A stretch of 9,850 nucleotides of DNA from Bugula neritina (Eukaryota > Animalia > Bryozoa), in the NCBI GenBank assembly GCA_964035545.1, contig CAXIUT010000049.1:1-9850 (forward strand), given 5' to 3'. Positions 1 to 9,850 of this stretch are shown piece by piece; within the stretch, counting starts at the first letter, position 1; every line of letters starts with the position of its first letter. A program made the position numbers and the translations under genes. The notes beneath the pieces are model-generated. The model saw only the letters and a program-made list of their open reading frames with translations. It searched no databases and was not told where the DNA came from.

Positions 1-87
1 CCCAACCCAACCCCAACCCCAACCCCCAACCCCAACCCCAACCCCAACCCCAACCCCAACCCCAACCCCAACCCCAACCCCAACCCC
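1..87 (+). repeat. Left telomere, (CCCCAA)n
   Basis: Tandem C4A2 hexamers from base 1 to 87, with a few C3/C5 units at the distal end. This is the Tetrahymena-type ciliate telomere repeat, with the C-rich strand at the 5' end as expected. Confidence 0.98.
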
Positions 88-132: not shown

Positions 133-2273
133 TCAAAAATATTTGCGACTATCGTTACTACCTATCGGAATTGGCTACAACTTCTACGCCCGTCTTCTTC
201 TGTTTTCTTCAAATACCATCATCTCCTGCTTAGCTTTTTCATAAGTCTCAGACTTCAGAGGAGTCAACTGTGCAGTCTTACCAGCAACTCCATTCTTAAA
301 GTAGTGTCCAGAAGGCACAGAATGCATCTCGCTGCCTTCTCTAGCTCCTCTAATGATATTATTCATCTTATAGCTGTCATGGCTTGATCTTTTATCGAAA
401 GAATCTTTCCTTTCCCTGGTATCTCTAAACACTATCTCCTTTCTATCTCTTTACTGCTCTATCATATCCTTGCTCATTCCATGTAACTTGGGGAAGTTAA
501 CTAGTCTCTATCTGTAAGTAAAATGAGGCACCATCCACTCTCTACGCTCTTAGCTCCACTAAGAATTATTTATAATCATTTAGACTTGATCTTGGTTCAT
601 CAAGATTGATATAATCGCATTGAACTTTTTAATTTCTTTTTATTGATATCGAATAGTATCTAATAATTCTTATTTTTCTTCTTCATGCTCATCTTGGACA
701 TCTTTTAGTTATACCAAGTTAGCAGTATATTTCTTTTTTATCTATTGGAATCTTTATCTCATTTAATCTACTTCCTCATTTAAATTTTTATAATTCTTTT
801 AAATATTAAGTAACTCATGTTCTCGACGTTATTTTTCCTTTTTGAACTCTTCTTCTTTCTTCTTTTGAATCTTAAGCTTTTATTTCAACTTTTTGATCTT
901 CTACATTTCACTTTTATCATCACTATCAGGACCTTTTCTCTAAAAATTGCTTTGCAACTGTTCTAGTTTTTATCTAAGTAGTTTTTTCTCTTATTGTTAA
1001 CTTCTCAACAAATTATCTTTATTTTTCAACTACTCCTCAAGTTACTTGCTATTTTCTTTATTTTATCCATCACGATATATCACTCTATCTTGATAGACTA
1101 TTTCCTGTGACCCAGCAGCAGCATGAGAAGATGCTGTTGAATTCATACTTACAGGCATCTTTCCTTCCAACATCAACTTCAACTTCTTTATTTCCTACAT
1201 ATACTCCTTTAATAAGGCATCTTTTGGATCTTCATTTACCTTTGGTTTATTCTGAATAAATTTAGCACGGCTAGCATATCGAAGAGTACTCAAAGTTTAC
1301 TCATAGTTATAGTTAGCAGGCGATACAGCAGCTATCATTACTGTTTTAGTATTGCCACCCAAAGAGTCCTGAAGCAATCTAGTCAACTTAGAATCTCTAT
1401 ATGGAATATGATGAGTTTTACCATCAACTAATGCTGAGATAACATTACCCAAAGCGCTCAAAGATAAGTTGATTTTAGTTGCTTCTTTCATGCCATCTCC
1501 AGTAGCTCCAGTTTTAGCAGCTCTTTCAGATCCAGCCAAATCAACTAGATTGAGTTTAGAGGCTTTATATTTTTAATTACCTTTTTAATCACTTTCCTGA
1601 GAATCAATGTAGATGCTAAAAATGCTATGAGATCGAGATGACTAAGCATTCATGTTGGTAGCTCTTGTGGCTCTATTTTTGAACCCAATATCCATATAAT
1701 GTTCCATTTTAGAGATAGAATCAACTTGAATTTGATTTAGATCTTTAACAAAAACTCCTTTATCTGGACTTTCTTTGAGCTACATCTTAGCTTTAGTATC
1801 TTTTCCCAACAAATCATGAATTTATTCATTATAGATTTAAATAAAACTGCAACGTATGAGATGAGTTTTAGATGTGTCATTTTTAGTAATAGTAACTATT
1901 TGACTGAAAGTTCTAGGAATAATACCTCTAGCCTCTTAACTATCATTTCCACCCATCATTGTATGAGTTTTACCACAGCCTGTCTGTCCATACGCAAAGA
2001 TAGTCCCATTGTAACCATCCAAGACGTTTTCAACTAATGAAAATGCACTTTGTTCATAGATGAGGTTTTGAGGAGAATCAGGAGCAAACACAAAGTCATA
2101 AGCAAAGGCTTTGGGATCTCCTTTGACTTATTCTTTGAAGAGATGAATGGAGTTAGATTTGTAGTCAACATTAACTATACTTTTGCAACCTTTATTAAAT
2201 GATATCTACCTCTATCTTTCTCTTTTTGATTCATAGGACGCACACGAACCATCACCTTCACTGCTTCAGCCAT
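133..2273 (-). CDS. Kinesin-2 family motor, KIF17/OSM-3-like, 706 aa; complement(join(133..2189,2210..2273)); TAR=Glu
   Basis: Starts [18 protein letters not shown]. Contains the P-loop [31 protein letters not shown], switch [13 protein letters not shown], switch [49 protein letters not shown] and the kinesin-2 neck [18 protein letters not shown] coiled coil and a tail with SEWSEERREW follow. The frame is open to TGA at 133-135 once the 20-nt intron is removed (2121 nt). Confidence 0.95.
2190..2209 (-). other. 20-nt spliceosomal intron in the kinesin gene
   Basis: The minus strand reads GTAGATATCATTTAATAAAG (GT..AG, AT-rich). Removing it joins ...[14 protein letters not shown] and restores the frame between the N-terminal VRVRP strand and the rest of the motor domain. 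Confidence 0.9.
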
Positions 2274-2698
2274 TAAGAACCCTGATAAAAATATTATATT
2301 GCATTCATCAGACAAATATCATCATTCATCAAAAAACCGTAACTCTCAAACCAACCAAATCAAAATCAATTATAAACAAAAAATAACTACTACAAATTGT
2401 CTTCAACTATGTTAGTCTCCAAATAATTTAATTATTTTGAATAATAATAATATTTTGAAAAGAGCATTCAATGTAGTTGAATTGGAAATAACTAGGACTC
2501 ATTCATTTGCCATTAAAGGGCTGATTATTTTTATTCATTTATTCATTGATAATTACTCATCCCATAAGTATATTTATTTGATGATTATTTTGAAATAAAA
2601 CAACTTTTATCATCTAAAACTTCAAATAGTTATAAAATCTTATCCATTCTTTCAAAACCAATATATTATAATGAAACATAATATGGTAATAGATTGAT

Positions 2699-3658
2699 TC
2701 AGAAATCAGTTTAGTTGAAGTTAGTCATATACAATTCTTTGATAAGAACATGCGAAGGAAAATCCATCATACTTATTCCTATACATTTCTGTCCTCTATT
2801 CTATCTCAGCCACTAGAGACCAGTCCGATTGGGTCCTTTCCCTATTTTTGCAAACATGTAGGGTAGAACAGCAAAAGCTCCAGTCCAAAAGTTGATGGTA
2901 AATCTATGCAAGTCACAGTTTTTATGTAACGCATCAGCTACAATACTTTTTTTGAATTTAACGTCCCAAGGAAATAGAATAAACATGTTTTGAATGTATG
3001 CAGTGGGCAGATCCCATATGCCATAGTATCCCTCTATTTTATAAGTATCAGGAAAGAATACATCAACTCCAGCTATTATAAAAGCCTTTCCTCTCACCTC
3101 CCCAATAGTTGGTATCTTAGTTGAAAAGTAAGCATCAATATTCGCTTTAGCCATTTCCTAAAGAATGTACTTATGAGGATCATATTTACCAAATTCAAGT
3201 TGAAAAGACACAAAAACGAACTACGATGGATTCTACTTCAAAAACTGACCCAACTGCACCAACATAGGAAACAAAGGAGTCAACCTGAATGGTCCGTGGT
3301 AGATAGTCAAAGGTTCAACATCATTAACTCTGAAATCGAGATATCTCATGCCAGCTTTAAGTTGATTAGTTATGTCCCATCCTTGACATTGATTCACTAT
3401 ACAAGCTCGAGGACAGTTGTAGGTTCCAGTATTATGGGATCCAGGGATAGTTAGATTGGAAATGAGGATGTTATCATTGAGATCAGACATCCAGTTGTCA
3501 GACAAATGGTCGGGATGAGTGACCATCTGCTAGTTATAATGCTAGTGGTCCAGTTATGACTGAATAGTAGCTACTAGATGAGAGAAGTGTTCTTCTGCTC
3601 TGTAGAGGAGGTAGAAGAAGTAGACCAACAGTCCCAAAAATATGTGTTTGCACTTCAT
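2699..3658 (-). CDS. Bacterial-type phosphatidylinositol-specific phospholipase C (PI-PLC X domain) with N-terminal signal/anchor, 319 aa
   Basis: With TAR=Glu there is one ORF from ATG 3658 to TGA 2699-2701, merging ORF-track fragments 3233..3526 and 2813..3154. It has a hydrophobic N-terminus MKCKHIFLGLLVYFFYLLY and the motifs NWMS, LTIPGSHNTG (catalytic His), QL.AGMRYLDFR, IYHG (second His), FLKENPSEFV, IPTIGEVRGK and GISMMDFP. Confidence 0.92.
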
Positions 3659-3779
3659 TTATTATCAATATATCCTATCAACATTATCATAATATTCATA
3701 GAAGATAGTTAAGGTAGTTTTATAAAAATAAACCATCCGTTCTTATCAACTAGATCCATGATTTAATAATATATAAATA
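3659..3779. promoter_or_regulatory. Putative bidirectional promoter region between PI-PLC and 3CxxC paralog A
   Basis: A 121-bp AT-rich spacer between head-to-head start codons (3658 minus, 3780 plus). Positional inference only. Confidence 0.45.
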
Positions 3780-4379
3780 ATGGACACAATATTCAATCCA
3801 GAATATGGCCACCTCTAGCAAGAATCCTAGATGGGTTTCAAGCCATTCCAACTAGATGACTATCTCCAACTATAAATACAACTCCACTAACACAGTAAAC
3901 CATAGCAAAGATCTCAAAATAAGTACAACATAAAGCAGTGCTACTCAATGATGAAAAAGCAATTATAGACAATGTTCTAATATGGAATAGATATAATAAG
4001 TGAGATAAGAATAGGACTATCTAAGAGGAAAGATAGACATTAGTATTTTACTAAAAAATATCAAATCTAGTATCAATGCTGCAATAAAAAATGGAACAAT
4101 AAATTCAAAAATATACATATCTACTATCAAATAGCCAAATAGTTTTAATAATCATCATAAAAAGATAAATAGAATAACAACTAAGACTAAGGATAAAGCT
4201 AGATATAAAATTTGGTTAACTTTCCATATGTGCTTCAATATTAATTAAAAATAACTCATGAGTTATGCAGCAAGTGCAAGAAAGGAGTATAAGGTAAAAT
4301 CGGATAATCTGATTTGATATCTTTTATCAAAAAAGTAACACATAAAATAGCTAAGTAACTTGTCAATTAAAAACAGTGA
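3780..4379 (+). CDS. Divergent, C-terminally truncated zf-3CxxC-like protein (paralog A), 199 aa
   Basis: A 600-nt ATG..TGA frame under TAR=Glu. It aligns by eye to the next two genes: KYNIKQCYSM vs SYTTKHAYSV; YQCCNKKWN vs FKC..RC..WTS; LKITHELCSKCKKGVEGKIGESDL vs FKIYGQKCRECKIWGSGSIIEPDM. It lacks the final H-x4-CEAC-x2-G-x-C motif. Confidence 0.72.
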
Positions 4380-4455
4380 TCTTATTCTCTTTATATCATT
4401 TATATTATTTATATGATTTAACTTTTTAAATATTAGAATTGATATCATACAAAAC

Positions 4456-4508
4456 TATTGATTAGATATAAAAATGAGAGGCAAATTTAACTACTTAATT
4501 GACTGTTA
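4456..4508 (+). promoter_or_regulatory. Conserved upstream block of paralog B (copy 1)
   Basis: TATTGATTAGATATAAAAATG (4456-4476) matches TATTGACTAGATATAAAAATG (5549-5569) at 20/21 positions. Both are followed by CAA.TTT.ACTACT and CTGTTA. Confidence 0.6.
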
Positions 4509-4528
4509 GCACCACTATAAATTCAAAT

Positions 4529-5452
4529 ATGGCGAAAAGAACTATCAACTTTGAACTAGATGATGACACTCCTGAGAAAAACATTCAAAAACCAAAATAC
4601 AAACCTTCATCTGAACCTAAAGATGAAAATAAAGAGTAAGATTCTTGGTTTGAATCTGAAAAAGACAAATTTTAAGATGAAAATAATGAAAAAGAAGAAT
4701 CTTGGGTTGAATATCAAGAAGAAGAGTTCAAAAATGAAAAGAAAGAGAAATACAAGATGTCCAGGTAAGATCAACTTGATCAACTAAACTACTAACTTGC
4801 TAATCCATCTCATTCAGCCAAAGGAGTCTGCAGCTATACTACCAAACATGCCTATTCAGTTATTTATGATCAATTTGACTAATTGAGAGACAAAGGCTAT
4901 GGCTTTATCACAGATTCTAATAAAAGATTATTTTTTGAGGGAAAAGATGCTCAAAACTACATTTACGAGATCAAAAGAGCCATCAAGCTTAGATTCAAAT
5001 GCAAAAACAATCGTTGCCCCTAATTTCAACGCGATGATAGCCAAAGATTATGGACTAGCTACAGGGGTGTAGTTTATTTCAGTTTTTATTTTGAGAAGAA
5101 AAGACAATAGAACTAAATGGCCTTTATGAGAATTAACTTTAAGATCTATGGACAAAAGTGCAGAGAATGTAAAATATGGGGAAGTGGGTCTATTATTGAA
5201 CCAGATATGAAAAATATGGCTAAGATATATGGTATGATTATTGAAAAGATTTTGAGTAAAGTGAAAAACCTATCAAATGGGATGGAACTAACCAATAACG
5301 AGAAAAATGGGAAAGCACCTTGGAGTAAGACTAAACTATTAGGTGGAAAATGTTTGACACACGAAGAAAGTTTATGTGAAGCTTGTGCCGAAGGAAAATG
5401 CATGTCATTCTATAAAAAGAAATATCACTATAAATAAAAAGAAACTAAATGA
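4529..5452 (+). CDS. zf-3CxxC (RTP/ZAR1-type zinc-binding domain) protein with acidic N-terminal extension (paralog B), 307 aa
   Basis: A 924-nt ATG..TGA frame. Motifs RFKCKNNRC...RLWTS, KIYGQKCREC and HEESLCEACAEGKC match the 3CxxC pattern (F-x-C..C..W-x-S; Y/F-x-Q-x-C-x2-C; H-x4-CEAC-x2-G-x-C). No transmembrane segment is visible. Confidence 0.87.
4620..4740 (+). repeat. Imperfect in-frame tandem repeat (~54-57 nt, about 2 copies) in the paralog B N-terminus
   Basis: AAGATGAAAATAA starts at 4620 and 4674, each followed by TCTTGG.TTGAAT. Peptides are DENKEEDSWFESEKDKFE and DENNEKEESWVEYQEEEFK. Confidence 0.7.
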
Positions 5453-5548
5453 TCTCCCTATTTGATTATATAATTATTCAGCTTTATCTAGAGGAAATAA
5501 AAATGTTGTTTAATTTATACTTTTAAGATTATTATTTCAAAAATATTT

Positions 5549-5604
5549 TATTGACTAGATATAAAAATGGTGTATCAATTTTACTACTAATAAAGAGGCT
5601 GTTA
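5549..5604 (+). promoter_or_regulatory. Conserved upstream block of paralog C (copy 2)
   Basis: Second copy of the block at 4456-4508, at nearly the same distance from the start codon (begins 76 nt vs 73 nt upstream). Confidence 0.6.
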
Positions 5605-5624
5605 TCTTGATATATATTAAAACA

Positions 5625-6311
5625 ATGCCAAATAAACCCAAACGATACGACCCGAAGGCTCTATAAGAAGAACTCGACTATTTGAACTAATAACTTGCTG
5701 ATCTCCCTTCATAAGCTAGAAGAGTTCACAGTTATACCTTTAAGCATGCTTATGATGTAATTCTGGATGAATTTGACTGTTTAAATGAATAGGGTTATCT
5801 TTTCGTTGCAAATAAAAACAAATACTAATTTTTGACAGGAAAAAGTGCTAATAACTATGAATTTTAGATAAAAAGATATATCAAATTAAGATTTAAATGC
5901 AAAAACAATCGATGTCCTTAGTTTCACAATACAGACAATCTAAGAAAATGGACTTCTTATCATGGTTTGGTTTGCTTTTCTTTTTACTTTTTGAAAAAAA
6001 CCAGATTAAATCCATAAAACTTCATGAGAATGAACCTAAAAATCTATGGACAGAAATGTAGACGCTGTCTAGAAGATGGAAGTGGATCTATCCTTGCCAC
6101 AGATATGAAAATACTAGCTAGAATATATGGAATAGTCATTGAAACTATCATGAATAAAGCAAAAAATCTTTCTAGAGGAATGAGACTTAACTATAAAGAG
6201 TAATATGGAGTCAGACCTTAAAACAAACGAAATAAAAGAAATTTGATTCATTAAAAAAAGTTATGTGAAGCCTGTACGAAAGGAATTTGTAGGTTTTCAA
6301 AAAGAAAATGA
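5625..6311 (+). CDS. zf-3CxxC (RTP/ZAR1-type zinc-binding domain) protein (paralog C), 228 aa
   Basis: A 687-nt ATG..TGA frame absent from the ORF track. Contains RFKCKNNRCPEF...RKWTSY, KIYGQKCRRC and HEKKLCEACTKGIC. Colinear with paralog B over essentially its whole length. Confidence 0.87.
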
Positions 6312-6417
6312 TTTCTTTTGATTGTCCTTTATTGTTAAATATTAGATCTAATAAATCATTCAGATATTGTTTGTTTAGTATTTAATATTTCAAACTATTA
6401 ATCATTCATATTCAATA

Positions 6418-7131
6418 ATGAACTACCAAGACAACTTCTTCAAACCCTACTCAAAAAAAATAAAATAACCTCCAAAACCATACCATCACCATCATTCCCC
6501 TTATAGAAAATAATACGAAATATAAGATCTTATTTACTCTCCTTAAGCCCACCAACTGCATTAATACGATTCGAGTCCTTCCTTTAAACTAACAAAAAAT
6601 TAGCATATCGCATTTAATCGAGTATAGACCGAACCAATCTGGGAACACCTCTACAACTAGGGAATGAAATCACAAAGATAAATCGAATAAATACATCATA
6701 AACATCTAAACAAAATAGATATCTAGTGCACCTTTCAACCAGCTATTCTAAATAGCAAAAGATACCTCATGCCTAGTAGTTCAACCTTCTTGTAAAGAAA
6801 TTAAGCTTGGCAATAGCATCGTATCTAGAAAATCGTTAGAGATAAATAAGAAAAGACCAATAAAAATATCAAATAGTGTACATTTACACCCAAATTAAAC
6901 AAACCTTATCGACCTCGTCACAGTCCTTAAGATGAAAAATTGCATACATTTATATAAAGGAAATAAATAAGTTAAAAAAATAGACTAATTAATCCATACT
7001 ACTCTCCATACAAACTCAATAAAAGTAGATAGAAAAGTTCTCCCAAAAGAAAAAAAGTCAATACGGCTACATATGATATGAAAAATGTTAAAAATATGAT
7101 TAGAAAATAATTAAAAAAAATAAATATCTGA
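6418..7131 (+). CDS. Uncharacterised protein with two ECTFxP motifs, 237 aa
   Basis: A 714-nt ATG..TGA frame under TAR=Glu. Contains IWEHLYNEG, IECTFQPAI, FLERNEAWQEHR and KECTFTPKLN. This motif spacing is familiar from uncharacterised protist, putatively cytoskeletal, proteins. Confidence 0.78.
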
Positions 7132-7343
7132 TTATTGTATTGTTTTTAATTAATCGCCTATATCAACCTTTATTAACTCATAATTGGTCTTATAATTGAG
7201 GAATCATCTAATTTTGAATAATATTTTGACTAATATTTATTATTATAGGCTAAGAACATTCTAGAATATTCGAGTATAATCTGGAAAACTCTTAATAATA
7301 TAAAGGAAACGACAGGTTGCTGTCTTCTATAATAATAAAACCA

Positions 7344-9662
7344 ATGAACAAAACAACCAATCATTCAGAATACAAACCTTCAGTTGTAGGAATAGACCTA
7401 GGCTCACAGTCAACCAAAATAGCAGCAGTGTAAAAAGGAGTAGTCGACATCATAACCAACTAAGCCAACCTCAGAACCACTCCATCTGTTATAGGCTATG
7501 GAAATAAAGAAAGACTAATAGGAGAGGCAGGATATTTAAAAATGAAATCTAATTTAGCTAATACCATAGTAGCTCCTCAAAGATATCTTGGATTACAATA
7601 ATCATAATATGCCAAAGAGTAAGGTAAGTATGCACCTTGTCCACCAAAATATCAAAACAATAACATCACATTCAATATCAATCACCAAGGATAACAACAG
7701 ACAATCACACCAGAACAAGTAACTGCCAGTTTTTTAACTAAAATATAAAAAATAGTACAACTCAACAAACTCAACAACCAGTTCTAAATTATAGCTGTTC
7801 CCAACTACCTCACTTATAGCTAGAGAAAAGCCATGTTGAATTCTATATAAATAGCAAAAAGAAGTATGAAATAAAACTATGGATTTATGCTTGTAAATTA
7901 ATCTACTGCAATTGGCATGGATTATGGCTTCTATAAAATGAATTAATTTCCATAAAAATAGTAAGATGCTAAAGTTGTCCTCTTTATTGACTTTGGACAT
8001 TCTAAACTATCTATATATGCCATGAAGTTTACTAAACAGTATCAAAAAGTTATCTATCAAAAACACATCAGACAACTTGGATGCAAAAATATTGATTAAC
8101 TCATGTTGTAGTTCTATGTTGAACTCTTTGAAAATGCCAATAAGGATCTGTAAATTGGTGTCAAATAAAGCAAAAAAGCTGTTTTGAAGTTATTTTAAAG
8201 TATATAAAAACAAAGAAAAGTTCTATCAGGCAACTCAGAAGCTGACTTCAACATCGACTGCCTCTTATAAGACAACGACTTAACATATACCATGAAAAGA
8301 TAGCAGTTCTAATAAATATCACAACCAGTCTTCACCAAAATATCTACCTTCTTTGCCTAGGTCAAACAAAACCTCAAATAACTAGGAGTAGACATCAGTC
8401 ACATCGAACTCATAGGCGGAGGATCAAGAATTCCTAGCTTTATCAAAACAGTCCAAGAAGGGTTCAATATCTAACCTTCGAGAACTCTTAATTCTAGTGA
8501 ATGCATTGCCAGAGGAGCAGCTCTTTGTGCAGCTATTCATAGCAGTATATTCAGAGCAAAACAATATTTATCTTTTGATGTTAGTTCATCAACTTTGGTT
8601 TGCAGCTGGAAAGGCTAAGGATAAAACATGGAAATATAAAATAACTAAACAGTTATTCTCAGATAAAACTAAACTATTATCACATAGAAAAAGGTAGATA
8701 TCTTAATAAAACCAACCCAATCTAAAATGTTATTCGATCTCAACTAAAAAACTTAAATTCAAGGTATAAAATCTCACATCTGCTCATTTGCTATCACTTT
8801 CCCTGAACAATAATAACCAACGGAAATAAAAGTATCTTTAGTAGTAGAGTTTGATTCTAACAGAATGGTCAATAAAATAAGAGTATTCTAGCAAAGAGAT
8901 AAATAGTATTCTTTGAAGATATAGGAATTGTCTTTTGAATAGAATTTATCAAAATAAACAATAGGTAATTTGATATAGATCTAACAAACTAGTTTAACAA
9001 GAGATAACAAAATATTATAATCATACTAAAAAAGAAATCAACTAGAATCACAACTATATTCCTTCAAAGAACAACTAAATAACCTATCAACAAATAAAGA
9101 TTTTATAAATCCTTCAATTGTCGAAGAAATACTATCTTACTTCAATGATGTTGAAGATAGACTTGATGACATCGTTGAATATCAGCTAGAAATGGATAAT
9201 ATGATAAATAAAATGAAATTGGTAAATGGAGAGATTTAAAATAATAAAAATAAATATGTATAAGTTTAATAGGAATTGAAAAAGCTGAAAGGATTTATAG
9301 AGTCAGTTATCAATGGAAAAATCAAATCTATCAAGTACTATCCCGGATAGGAAGTATAAAAAGTAAAAAAATGGATCAAATCTACTCTAGAATAACTCAA
9401 AAATCAACCCAAATATCAATAACTTTGTACCTCAGTCAACCAAATCAAAAATGTTCAAGAAGATCTGATAGAAAAGATAGAAGAATGTCAAGCATAAGAA
9501 CTAAGAAAATAACAAGAAGCACAAAGACAACACTACCGACCTCAACAACAAAGATACAACAACAGTCCTTTTAACTTCAATGGTTTTGGGCAACCAAGTT
9601 ACCAAACTCCAAGAAGAAGCAGAAACACATTTAATTCTGGATTTTTCCCAGGATTTTTCTGA
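7344..9662 (+). CDS. Hsp110/SSE (HSPA4-like) Hsp70-superfamily chaperone, divergent, 772 aa
   Basis: A 2319-nt uninterrupted frame. Motifs: SVVGIDLGSQ, IITNEANLRTTPS, TPEQVTA, AVPNY, LVNESTAIGMDYG, VLFIDFGHS (the Hsp110-type D-x-GHS), IEKQRKVLSGN, FNIDCLLED, IELIGGGSRIP, SRTLNSSECIARGAAL and KRNQLESQLY. Confidence 0.93.
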
Positions 9663-9718: not shown

Positions 9719-9850
9719 GGGGTTGGGGTTGGGGTTGGGGTTGGGGTTGGGGTTGGGGTTGGGGTTGGGGTTGGGGTTGGGGTTGGGGTTGGGGTTGGGG
9801 TTGGGGTTGGGGGGGTTGGGGTTGGGGTTGGGGTTGGGGTTGGGGTTGGG
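9719..9850 (+). repeat. Right telomere, (GGGGTT)n
   Basis: Tandem G4T2 hexamers to the end of the window, the reverse complement of the left repeat. Both ends are therefore capped. Confidence 0.98.

What the first reader, a model, noticed from the sequence alone, without database searches (positions are those of the whole stretch)
133..9662. Non-standard genetic code: UAA and UAG both read as glutamate, UGA the sole stop
Seen in sequence: in-frame TAA/TAG sit at conserved Glu positions in unrelated families. Kinesin: SFI[TAA 1837-39]IYNE[TAA 1822-24]IHDLL, NYE[TAA 1297-99]TLSTLRY and MNA[TAG 1642-44]SSRSH. PI-PLC: FLK[TAG 3233-35]NPS[TAG 3221-23]FV. Hsp110: ITN[TAA 7461-63] and LVN[TAA 7899-7901]STA. 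The 3CxxC paralogs give an internal control: GAG 4967 aligns with TAG 5865, GAA 5363 with TAA 6252, and TAA 5021 with TAG 5919. Conserved Gln sites (AYGQTG, LLQDSL, YGQKC) use CAG. All seven genes end at their first in-frame TGA. Established knowledge: this is NCBI table 30, described from peritrich ciliates. Inference: the source is a peritrich; if it is not, this would be an independent reassignment.
Basis: partly seen in the sequence, partly recalled or inferred. Interest (0 to 1): 0.8.

Follow-up and report, generated by a model that had tools for sequence, protein, structure and literature searches.

The report
UAA/UAG encode glutamate; known ciliate code

Summary
Observation confirmed. 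The one slip is that the Gln in zfA's YGQKC is CAA, not CAG.

The seven UGA-delimited genes hold 118 TAA and 52 TAG in frame and no TGA. The other two frames hold 75 and 95 TGA.

Three independent tests give Glu for both codons:
- **Orthologue codons.** In 13 metagenomic kinesin orthologues, TAA and TAG pair with Glu 68-69%, Asp 14%, Gln 3-5% and Lys under 2%. That matches GAA and GAG.
- **Outgroups.** In 31 kinesin-2 loci with no in-frame stop, TAA sites favour Glu by +14.8 log2 odds (next best -3.2). Two TAA sit at invariant Glu.
- **Other genes.** PI-PLC and Hsp110 orthologues, and solved PI-PLC, Sse1 and Hsc70 structures, have Glu at the cited sites.

Ciliate loci from the same search that carry stops at invariant Gln serve as a control.

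The kinesin lies in a strongly supported clade of 15 in which every member places its in-frame stops on Glu or Asp columns. One Logan contig is syntenic with the window.

The window has C4A2 telomeres and a 20-nt intron. The code itself is already known.

The parts
1..87 (.). 5' telomere, C4A2 repeats running to the first base of the window (a few irregular units: CCCAA, CCCCCAA)
   Evidence: Read directly; 12 exact CCCCAA units
133..2273 (-). Kinesin-2 gene. ATG 2273-2271, exon 1 to 2210, intron 2190-2209, exon 2 2189-136, TGA 135-133. In-frame TAA/TAG run through the motor, coiled coil and tail
   Evidence: Pfam Kinesin E 3.7e-41 and 2.4e-21 on pieces. Best solved relatives are OSM-3 and KIF3B. 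13 full-length orthologues at about 70% nucleotide identity
2190..2209 (-). 20-nt GT..AG intron, phase 1, after codon 21 of the kinesin
   Evidence: It restores the frame between [22 protein letters not shown] and CKSIVNVD. The same site holds 21-24-nt GT..AG introns in L001, L003, L005, L012 and L014, and none in L004 and L007
1837..1839 (-). TAA at the Glu of the kinesin (I/L)EIYNE motif
   Evidence: Glu in 29/29 no-stop outgroup loci and 29/31 others. Orthologues: GAA 8, GAG 1, TAA 2, TAG 2
1297..1299 (-). TAA at the Glu of kinesin Y(E/D)ETLSTLRYA
   Evidence: Glu in 31/31 and 35/35 outgroup loci. Orthologues: TAA 7, GAA 4, TAG 2
1780..1782 (-). TAG in the kinesin motor (KM[TAG]LKESP)
   Evidence: Outgroup: Glu 17, Asp 11. 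Orthologues: TAG 4, GAT 3, GAA 2, GAG 2, GAC 1, TAA 1
2699..3658 (-). Bacterial-type PI-PLC / PLC X-domain protein with a hydrophobic N-terminus, 319 codons, TGA 2701-2699
   Evidence: Pfam PI-PLC-X is weak on the window piece (E 0.0016, below cut-off). The orthologue P0001 matches Listeria and Bacillus PI-PLC structures at 3e-13 to 8e-11. Nine distinct orthologue sequences aligned
3221..3223 (-). TAG at the Glu of the PI-PLC NPxE motif
   Evidence: Orthologues: GAA 7, GAG 1, TAA 1. Glu in Listeria and Bacillus PI-PLC structures
3780..4379 (+). Gene u1, function unknown, 199 codons, rich in TAA/TAG, ends at TGA 4377-4379
   Evidence: Conserved in the syntenic contig L083 (tblastn E 3e-17). No Pfam family
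4529..5452 (+). 3CxxC zinc-ribbon gene zfA
   Evidence: Pfam Zn_ribbon_3CxxC at 31 bits, cut-off 23. Aligned with zfB and L083
5625..6311 (+). 3CxxC zinc-ribbon gene zfB, tandem paralogue of zfA
   Evidence: Codon alignment gives TAG 5865 = GAG 4967, TAA 6252 = GAA 5363 (and TAA in L083), and TAG 5919 = TAA 5021
6418..7131 (+). Gene u2, function unknown, 237 codons, with a repeated ECTFxP motif in which two of the Glu are TAG
   Evidence: Conserved in L083 (tblastn E 3e-34). L083 has Glu at both motif positions. No Pfam family
7344..9662 (+). Hsp110/Sse1-type chaperone, 772 codons with 59 in-frame TAA/TAG, TGA 9660-9662
   Evidence: Pfam HSP70 on a piece. Pieces of the orthologue L083 (51% identity) match HSPH1 and Sse1 best
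7461..7463 (+). TAA in Hsp110 (ITN[TAA]ANLRTTPS)
   Evidence: Glu in L083 and in Sse1; Asp in Hsc70
9719..9850 (.). 3' telomere, G4T2 repeats running to the last base
   Evidence: Read directly; 21 exact GGGGTT units

Best explanation
The window is a whole macronuclear chromosome of a ciliate that uses the peritrich nuclear code. UAA and UAG are ordinary glutamate codons, and together they supply 54% of the Glu codons here. UGA is the only terminator.

Shown here: both codons behave as synonyms of GAA and GAG in orthologues, in paralogues and against outgroups, and UGA is excluded from the reading frames and closes all seven genes.

Inferred from established knowledge of such codes, not seen here: decoding is by tRNA-Glu variants with UUA and CUA anticodons, together with an eRF1 that no longer recognises UAA or UAG. 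Also inferred: the organism is a peritrich (Oligohymenophorea, Peritrichia).
For: 1. Codon use. The seven genes hold GAA 106, GAG 36, TAA 118, TAG 52 and TGA 0 in 2768 codons. TGA occurs 75 and 95 times in the other two frames.

2. Orthologue codon pairs. In a 14-sequence kinesin alignment, the sense partners of TAA are Glu 68.9%, Asp 13.6%, Gln 5.5% and Lys 1.5%. Those of TAG are Glu 67.6%, Asp 14.0% and Gln 3.1%. The codon-level partner lists of TAA, TAG, GAA and GAG are nearly identical. Mean log-likelihood per pair is -1.26 and -1.34 for Glu, against -2.3 for Asp and -3.2 for Gln.

3. Column counts. Of 103 columns holding a TAA, 68 are Glu-majority. Of 76 holding a TAG, 48 are Glu-majority.

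4. Outgroups. In 31 kinesin-2 loci with no in-frame stop, summed log2 odds at the TAA sites are Glu +14.8, next best -3.2, Lys -7.3 and Gln -8.8.

5. PI-PLC. All nine window TAA/TAG sites were checked against nine orthologues. Six align with GAA/GAG/TAA/TAG only. The NPxE Glu is also present in the solved PI-PLC structures matched.

6. Hsp110 against L083. TAA aligns with Glu 23, TAA/TAG 6 and Gln 7 of 46. TAG aligns with Glu 6 of 13. GAA shows the same profile. The conserved Glu of Hsc70 in the CER and FEG motifs aligns with Glu in the orthologue L083, and L083 aligns there with window TAA.

7. Control. Gln-code ciliate loci from the same search carry their stops at invariant Gln (AYGQTG, LLQDSL), where the window has CAG.

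8. Clade. The window's kinesin sits in a clade of 15 (SH-aLRT 99) whose members all put in-frame stops on Glu or Asp columns.

9. Table identity. Table 30 is TAA = E, TAG = E, stop TGA. The literature assigns UAR = Glu to peritrichs.
Against: - No tRNA gene occurs in the window or in the 24 loci scanned with ARAGORN, and Rfam adds only one tRNA, the tRNA-Lys of L059. There is no eRF1 gene. The mechanism is therefore unobserved.
- No rRNA or named relative is available, so peritrich identity is untested.
- From the three outgroup kinesin sites alone, TAG cannot be separated from Asp (Asp +7.5, Glu +6.0). The call for Glu rests on the orthologue data.
- Pair counts are pseudo-replicated by shared ancestry.
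- Seven genes cannot exclude occasional context-dependent termination at UAA or UAG.
- A paper I could not read, known only from a reference list, is titled as reporting 'less biased stop codon usage' in three peritrichs.
Confidence: 0.93

Rival explanations
1. The common ciliate code (table 6): UAA and UAG both encode glutamine.
For: It is the commonest reassignment in ciliates and the inferred ancestral state of Oligohymenophorea. A minority of sites align with Gln: 7 of 46 Hsp110 TAA sites and 5.5% of kinesin TAA partners.
Against: The Gln share is no higher than for GAA/GAG themselves. Outgroup log2 odds for Gln are -8.8 (TAA) and -5.5 (TAG). Invariant Gln sites in the window use CAG or CAA, while true Gln-code loci in the same search carry stops there.
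Confidence: 0.01
2. A split code like Oligohymenophorea sp. PL0344: UAA = lysine, UAG = glutamate.
For: It is known in a related class member (PMC10553269). One Hsp110 TAA (LTKI[TAA]KIV) aligns with Lys in HSPH1 and Sse1.
Against: That same site is Glu in the orthologue L083. Lys makes up 1.5% of TAA partners. TAA sits at two invariant-Glu kinesin columns. Log2 odds for Lys are -7.3. None of the 26 Lys-majority columns in the window's kinesin motor carries a TAA or TAG.
Confidence: 0.01
3. UAG encodes aspartate rather than glutamate, while UAA = Glu.
For: At the three kinesin-motor TAG sites, outgroups slightly favour Asp (+7.5 against +6.0). PI-PLC TAG 2813-15 aligns only with GAC/GAT.
Against: Across the clade, TAG partners are Glu 68% and Asp 14%, the same as for GAG, and not the profile of Asp codons. 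TAG interchanges freely with TAA at the same columns. 48 of 76 TAG columns are Glu-majority against 10 Asp-majority. The NPxE Glu is a TAG.
Confidence: 0.02
4. An ambiguous code: UAA and/or UAG are Glu inside genes but also terminate some genes depending on context, as UAA does in Blastocrithidia or all stops do in Condylostoma.
For: Such codes exist. Only seven gene ends are available. The title of an unread paper hints at mixed stop usage in some peritrichs.
Against: All seven genes run to a TGA. Conserved residues follow the last TAA/TAG in the kinesin, PI-PLC, u2 and Hsp110 C-termini. TGA is wholly absent in frame.
Confidence: 0.05
5. The code is as described, but the organism is not a peritrich: an independent UAR-to-Glu reassignment in another ciliate lineage.
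For: Nothing in the window ties it to Peritrichia directly. C4A2 telomeres and tiny introns are not unique to peritrichs. All relatives found are unnamed metagenome or SRA contigs.
Against: Published ciliate surveys find UAR = Glu only in peritrichs. The window belongs to a diverse, widespread Glu-code clade. C4A2 telomeres fit Oligohymenophorea (my own knowledge). A narrow distribution of intron lengths is reported for three peritrich genomes (PMC13685798), and the 20-24-nt introns here fit that.
Confidence: 0.07
6. TAA and TAG are real stops: the genes are pseudogenes or are rescued by occasional read-through.
For: Under the standard code every gene is broken; the longest standard ORF is 113 aa.
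Against: Homology continues across 170 in-frame TAA/TAG without frame loss. The same pattern holds in about 20 orthologous loci from different samples, and the substitution spectrum is that of a sense codon.
Confidence: 0.005

Closest known systems
NCBI translation table 30, Peritrich nuclear code (Vorticella, Opisthonecta, Carchesium, Campanella)
   Same: UAA = Glu, UAG = Glu, and UGA the only stop.
   Different: No difference detected. Whether the source organism is a peritrich was not testable.
Oligohymenophorea sp. PL0344 code (UAA = Lys, UAG = Glu; PMC10553269)
   Same: UAG = Glu, UGA the stop, and probably the same ciliate class.
   Different: UAA is Glu here, not Lys. The one intron seen here is 20 nt, against a median of 57 bp in PL0344.
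Ciliate/dasycladacean code, table 6 (Tetrahymena, Paramecium, Oxytricha)
   Same: Both UAA and UAG are sense and UGA is the sole stop. The telomere repeat is of the Tetrahymena type, C4A2 (my own knowledge).
   Different: The amino acid is Glu, not Gln. Gln-code loci in the same search act as the contrast.
Blastocrithidia nonstop code (UAR = Glu, UGA = Trp, UAA also stop; PMC12153298 abstract)
   Same: UAR is read as Glu.
   Different: Here UGA is never in frame and ends every gene. The telomeres are ciliate-type, not trypanosomatid.

Membership tests
Peritrich nuclear code (NCBI table 30) | UAA decoded as glutamate | tested here: met
   Two TAA sit at invariant-Glu kinesin columns. Log2 odds for Glu are +14.8. 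The orthologue partner profile equals that of GAA/GAG.
Peritrich nuclear code (NCBI table 30) | UAG decoded as glutamate | tested here: met
   TAG partners are Glu 68% and Asp 14%, the same as for GAG. 48 of 76 TAG columns are Glu-majority. The PI-PLC NPxE Glu is a TAG. Outgroups alone give only 'acidic'.
Peritrich nuclear code (NCBI table 30) | UGA is the only stop codon | tested here: met
   No in-frame TGA in 2768 codons, against 75 and 95 out of frame. All seven genes end at TGA. Only seven genes, so rare use of UAA or UAG as stops is not excluded.
Peritrich nuclear code (NCBI table 30) | Source organism belongs to Peritrichia | not testable with these tools
   No rRNA in the window or in the 14 loci scanned with Rfam. 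Relatives are unnamed metagenome or SRA contigs. The sample accessions are not found in the paper library.
Peritrich nuclear code (NCBI table 30) | tRNA-Glu genes with UUA and CUA anticodons, and an eRF1 restricted to UGA | not testable with these tools
   No tRNA in the window. The only tRNA in the scanned relatives is tRNA-Lys(UUU) in L059. No eRF1 gene is present.
Ciliate macronuclear chromosome | Telomere repeats of opposite polarity at both ends (C-rich 5', G-rich 3'), gene-dense, with tiny introns | tested here: met
   C4A2 at 1-87 and G4T2 at 9719-9850. Seven genes with spacers of 106-425 nt, and 45 and 56 nt to the telomeres. One 20-nt intron.
Kinesin-2 (OSM-3/KIF17/KIF3) | Kinesin motor domain closest to kinesin-2 motors | tested here: met
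   Pfam Kinesin E 3.7e-41. Best PDB matches are OSM-3 (6e-43) and KIF3B (3e-41).
Hsp110/Sse1 branch of the Hsp70 superfamily | Hsp70-type nucleotide-binding domain closer to Hsp110 than to Hsp70 | tested here: met
   Pieces of the orthologue L083 match HSPH1 (2.6e-12) and Sse1 (1e-13) ahead of Hsc70 (2e-10). The window piece matches Pfam HSP70 weakly.
Bacterial-type PI-PLC / PLC X-domain proteins | X-domain with the catalytic His motif and sequence homology to PI-PLC | tested here: met
   The window piece is below Pfam's cut-off (18.5 against 23.1 bits). The orthologue P0001 matches Listeria and Bacillus PI-PLC at 3e-13 to 8e-11, with IPGSHNT aligned on IPGTHD. Enzyme activity was not tested.
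Zn_ribbon_3CxxC (PF13695) | Match to the family profile above the curated cut-off | tested here: met
   The zfA piece scores 31 bits against a cut-off of 23. zfB is assigned by alignment to zfA only; its own 61-aa piece gave no hit.

The most novel reading that the evidence does not exclude
The chromosome, and the environmental Glu-code clade it belongs to, come from a ciliate lineage outside Peritrichia. UAR-to-Glu would then have arisen a second time among ciliates.
Probability: 0.06. Interest if true: 0.6.

Novelty: already known. Interest (0 to 1): 0.25.

Why it matters
For annotation it matters a great deal. Under the standard or bacterial code all seven genes shatter into fragments; the public gene calls for the relatives are exactly such fragments. 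Under the usual ciliate table 6, 170 residues, 6% of all codons and 54% of the glutamates, would be mistranslated as Gln.

For biology it adds little that is new. The code has been described for peritrichs. The useful by-products are:
- a complete seven-gene telomere-to-telomere mini-chromosome;
- evidence that Glu-code ciliates are common and diverse in public metagenomes;
- a simple internal control that separates the two codes, by asking whether in-frame stops fall at invariant Glu or at invariant Gln in kinesin.

Tried and rejected
- **Exact look-up of a window ORF in the assemblies index:** nothing on record. The tools also mask names for the window's own proteins, so I did not pursue the source.
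- **Synteny in the 80 metagenome kinesin loci:** none carries the other window genes. Synteny was found only in Logan contigs L083 and L084.
- **tRNA and Rfam scans** of the window and of the scanned relatives (24 loci with ARAGORN, 14 with Rfam): only one tRNA-Lys, and no suppressor tRNA, rRNA or other RNA family.
- **Naming the relatives from their sample accessions:** no paper holds SRR8581135, SRR23403440, SRR12350688 or GROS21. The supplement of PMC11321004 is not held. Front Mar Sci 2020;7:602323 is not held. No held paper gives a peritrich telomere repeat.
- **Pfam on u1 and u2,** through the longer pieces of the L083 orthologues: only sub-threshold noise.
- **My automatic code labels** (at least two stops on Glu/Asp columns) are noisy outside the window's clade, for example L022, L041 and L043. 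I rely only on loci inspected site by site.
- **Not run, because not needed:** the large representative search, structure prediction, and the two remaining word searches.
- **Handling of in-frame stops:** TAA and TAG were written as X or as markers in every script and never replaced by a residue. No contig looked human.

Full report
**What the window is.** Both ends are telomeric. C4A2 repeats occupy 1-87 and G4T2 repeats occupy 9719-9850, each running to the edge of the sequence. The 9850 bases are therefore a complete linear chromosome of the ciliate macronuclear type, about 30% G+C.

Under the bacterial or standard code the longest ORF is 113 aa. If only TGA is taken as a stop, seven long ORFs appear:
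- kinesin (-), ATG 2273 to TGA 133-135;
- PI-PLC (-), 3658-2699;
- u1 (+), 3780-4379;
- 3CxxC zinc-ribbon zfA (+), 4529-5452;
- 3CxxC zinc-ribbon zfB (+), 5625-6311;
- u2 (+), 6418-7131;
- Hsp110 (+), 7344-9662.

Family assignments hold:
- Kinesin: Pfam Kinesin E 3.7e-41. Best solved relatives are OSM-3 and KIF3B, so it is a kinesin-2.
- zfA: Zn_ribbon_3CxxC at 31 bits against a cut-off of 23.
- Hsp110: Pfam HSP70 on a piece. The longer orthologue pieces match HSPH1 and Sse1 ahead of Hsc70.
- PI-PLC: Pfam PI-PLC-X is weak on the window piece. An orthologue fragment matches Listeria and Bacillus PI-PLC structures at 3e-13 to 8e-11.
- u1 and u2 have no family, but they are conserved in a syntenic relative (E 3e-17 and 3e-34).

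The kinesin has one 20-nt GT..AG intron at 2190-2209. Orthologues carry 21-24-nt introns at the same site, or none.

**Checking the observation.** The paralogue control is as described: GAG 4967 / TAG 5865, GAA 5363 / TAA 6252 (with TAA in the L083 orthologue too), and TAA 5021 / TAG 5919.

The coding frames hold GAA 106, GAG 36, TAA 118, TAG 52 and no TGA in 2768 codons. The two other frames of the same DNA hold 75 and 95 TGA.

There is one slip: the Gln of YGQKC in zfA is CAA, not CAG. Some of the 'conserved Glu' sites are also only acidic or variable outside the clade:
- MNA[TAG]SSRSH is mostly Asp in outgroups.
- The first PI-PLC TAG is Lys or Asp in the bacterial enzymes.
- LVN[TAA]STA is Asp in HSPH1 and Sse1.

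**Related sequences.** A metagenome scan with the 91-aa kinesin piece returned 80 loci. Thirteen distinct ones (L001-L014, with L008 a near-copy of L007) carry full-length orthologues at about 70% nucleotide identity. All are themselves full of in-frame TAA and TAG.

A word search with a PI-PLC piece found nine fragments at 71-75% identity. These are gene calls made under a standard-type code, so they are cut at the relatives' own TAA/TAG. Where a relative has GAA or GAG at a window stop, its fragment reads straight through with Glu.

Their contigs include L083 and L084, from Logan assemblies of two SRA runs. These keep the window's gene order, Hsp110-u2-zf-u1-PI-PLC-...-kinesin. They also include L081 and L082, which begin with C4A2 telomere repeats.

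**Test 1, codon substitution among orthologues.** In the 14-sequence kinesin codon alignment, the window's 34 TAA/TAG sites downstream of the intron align almost only with GAA, GAG, TAA, TAG, GAT and GAC.

Over all sequence pairs, the sense partners are:

| Codon | Glu | Asp | Gln | Lys |
|---|---|---|---|---|
| TAA | 68.9% | 13.6% | 5.5% | 1.5% |
| TAG | 67.6% | 14.0% | 3.1% | not among the eight commonest |

The codon-level partner lists of TAA, TAG, GAA and GAG are nearly the same. Those of CAA/CAG and AAA/AAG are quite different.

Counted by column, which is more conservative, 68 of 103 TAA columns and 48 of 76 TAG columns are Glu-majority.

PI-PLC was aligned against nine distinct orthologues. 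Six of the nine window sites align only with GAA/GAG/TAA/TAG. One aligns only with GAC/GAT. Two are variable.

Hsp110 against L083: TAA aligns with Glu 23, TAA/TAG 6, Gln 7 and others 10. TAG aligns with Glu 6 of 13. GAA gives the same profile.

**Test 2, outgroups that do not share the code.** Thirty-one kinesin-2 loci outside the clade have no in-frame stop in the aligned part. At the window's TAA sites they give:
- Glu 29/29 (1837-39);
- Glu 31/31 (1297-99);
- Glu 22/29 (1822-24).

Summed log2 odds over seven TAA sites are Glu +14.8, next best -3.2, Lys -7.3 and Gln -8.8. Six of the ten motor-domain sites fall on the 25 Glu-majority columns of 331 (P = 1.7e-5).

The three TAG sites are acidic in the outgroups (Asp +7.5, Glu +6.0). 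Outgroups alone therefore do not separate Glu from Asp for TAG; the orthologue data do.

Solved structures agree:
- The NPxE Glu of PI-PLC is a window TAG.
- ITN[TAA] is Glu in Sse1.
- The Glu of the Hsc70 motifs CER and FEG aligns with Glu in L083. L083 aligns there with window TAA.

**Control.** The same metagenome search also brought in ciliates of the usual Gln code. Their in-frame stops sit at invariant Gln (AYGQTG, LLQDSL), where the window has CAG. Stops in the window's clade sit at invariant Glu (IEIYNE, LAGSER, NEDPKD). The method therefore tells the two codes apart.

**Stop codon.** All seven genes end at TGA, six of them followed by T. Orthologue C-termini remain alignable after the last TAA/TAG for five of the seven genes: NFN[TAA]TDF against NFPETHF in PI-PLC, and likewise in the kinesin, u2 and Hsp110.

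**What it is, and what is inferred.** The decoding is exactly NCBI table 30, 'Peritrich Nuclear'. Surveys state that UAR-to-Glu arose once among ciliates, in Peritrichia. The nearest variant, Oligohymenophorea sp. PL0344, reads UAA as Lys and UAG as Glu (PMC10553269; PMC11687900). The PL0344 code is excluded here.

The mechanism is carried over from what is known of such codes: tRNA-Glu with UUA/CUA anticodons and an eRF1 blind to UAR. Neither the window nor the scanned relatives carry such a tRNA.

Peritrich identity is likely on four grounds:
- the code itself;
- C4A2 telomeres, which I know as typical of Oligohymenophorea;
- 20-24-nt introns, which fit the narrow intron-length distribution reported for three peritrich genomes (PMC13685798);
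- a kinesin tree in which the window lies in a clade of 15 (SH-aLRT 99) whose members all put stops on Glu/Asp columns.

It is not shown, however. One caveat: a paper I could not obtain is titled as reporting 'less biased stop codon usage' in three peritrichs. Occasional termination at UAA or UAG elsewhere in such genomes cannot be excluded from seven genes.

**Verdict.** The phenomenon is already known, so interest is low to moderate. The residual novel reading, a non-peritrich with an independently evolved Glu code, has a probability of about 6%.

Throughout, in-frame TAA and TAG were handled as X or as markers. No contig looked human.

Noticed in passing
window 1-87 and 9719-9850: The window is an entire telomere-to-telomere chromosome. 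Only 45 and 56 nt separate the outermost TGA stops from the telomere repeats. The repeats contain a few irregular units (CCCAA, CCCCCAA, GGGGGGGTT), possibly read errors.
   Followed up: partly
window 2190-2209; L001, L003, L005, L012, L014, L004, L007: The kinesin's 20-nt intron is present or absent at one site among relatives: 21-24 nt in five orthologues and none in two.
   Followed up: yes
window 3780-4379 (u1) and 6418-7131 (u2): Two conserved genes with no Pfam family and 10-12% TAA/TAG codons. u2 has a repeated ECTFxP motif. u1 has CxxC-like cysteine pairs and lies next to the two 3CxxC genes, so it might be a third, divergent member.
   Followed up: partly
L083 1206-14999 against window 133-9662: The syntenic Logan contig (found in two SRA runs) has the same gene order. 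It has a single 3CxxC gene where the window has a tandem pair, and about 5 kb of extra genes (MTPAP-like, protein kinase) between PI-PLC and the kinesin.
   Followed up: partly
window stops at 133-135, 2699-2701, 4377-4379, 5450-5452, 6309-6311, 7129-7131, 9660-9662: Six of the seven TGA stops are followed by T.
   Followed up: no
L062, L068, L075; L015, L059: Further kinesin-2 loci outside the window's immediate clade also carry in-frame stops at invariant Glu. Glu-code ciliates contribute more than one kinesin-2 lineage to public metagenomes. In the tree, L062/L068/L075 sit next to a Gln-code locus, L072.
   Followed up: partly
L018, L019: Complete about 3.4-kb single-gene nanochromosomes capped by C4A4/G4T4 repeats (spirotrich type) were among the kinesin hits.
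   Followed up: no
L081 1-16, L082 1-16: The contigs of 48 and 38 kb that carry the PI-PLC orthologue start with C4A2 telomere repeats. Chromosomes in this clade therefore range from about 10 kb to at least 48 kb.
   Followed up: no
window coding regions: TAA is the single most used glutamate codon (118 of 312). Relatives differ widely in how much they use TAA/TAG: L009 and L081 have very few, L012 very many.
   Followed up: partly
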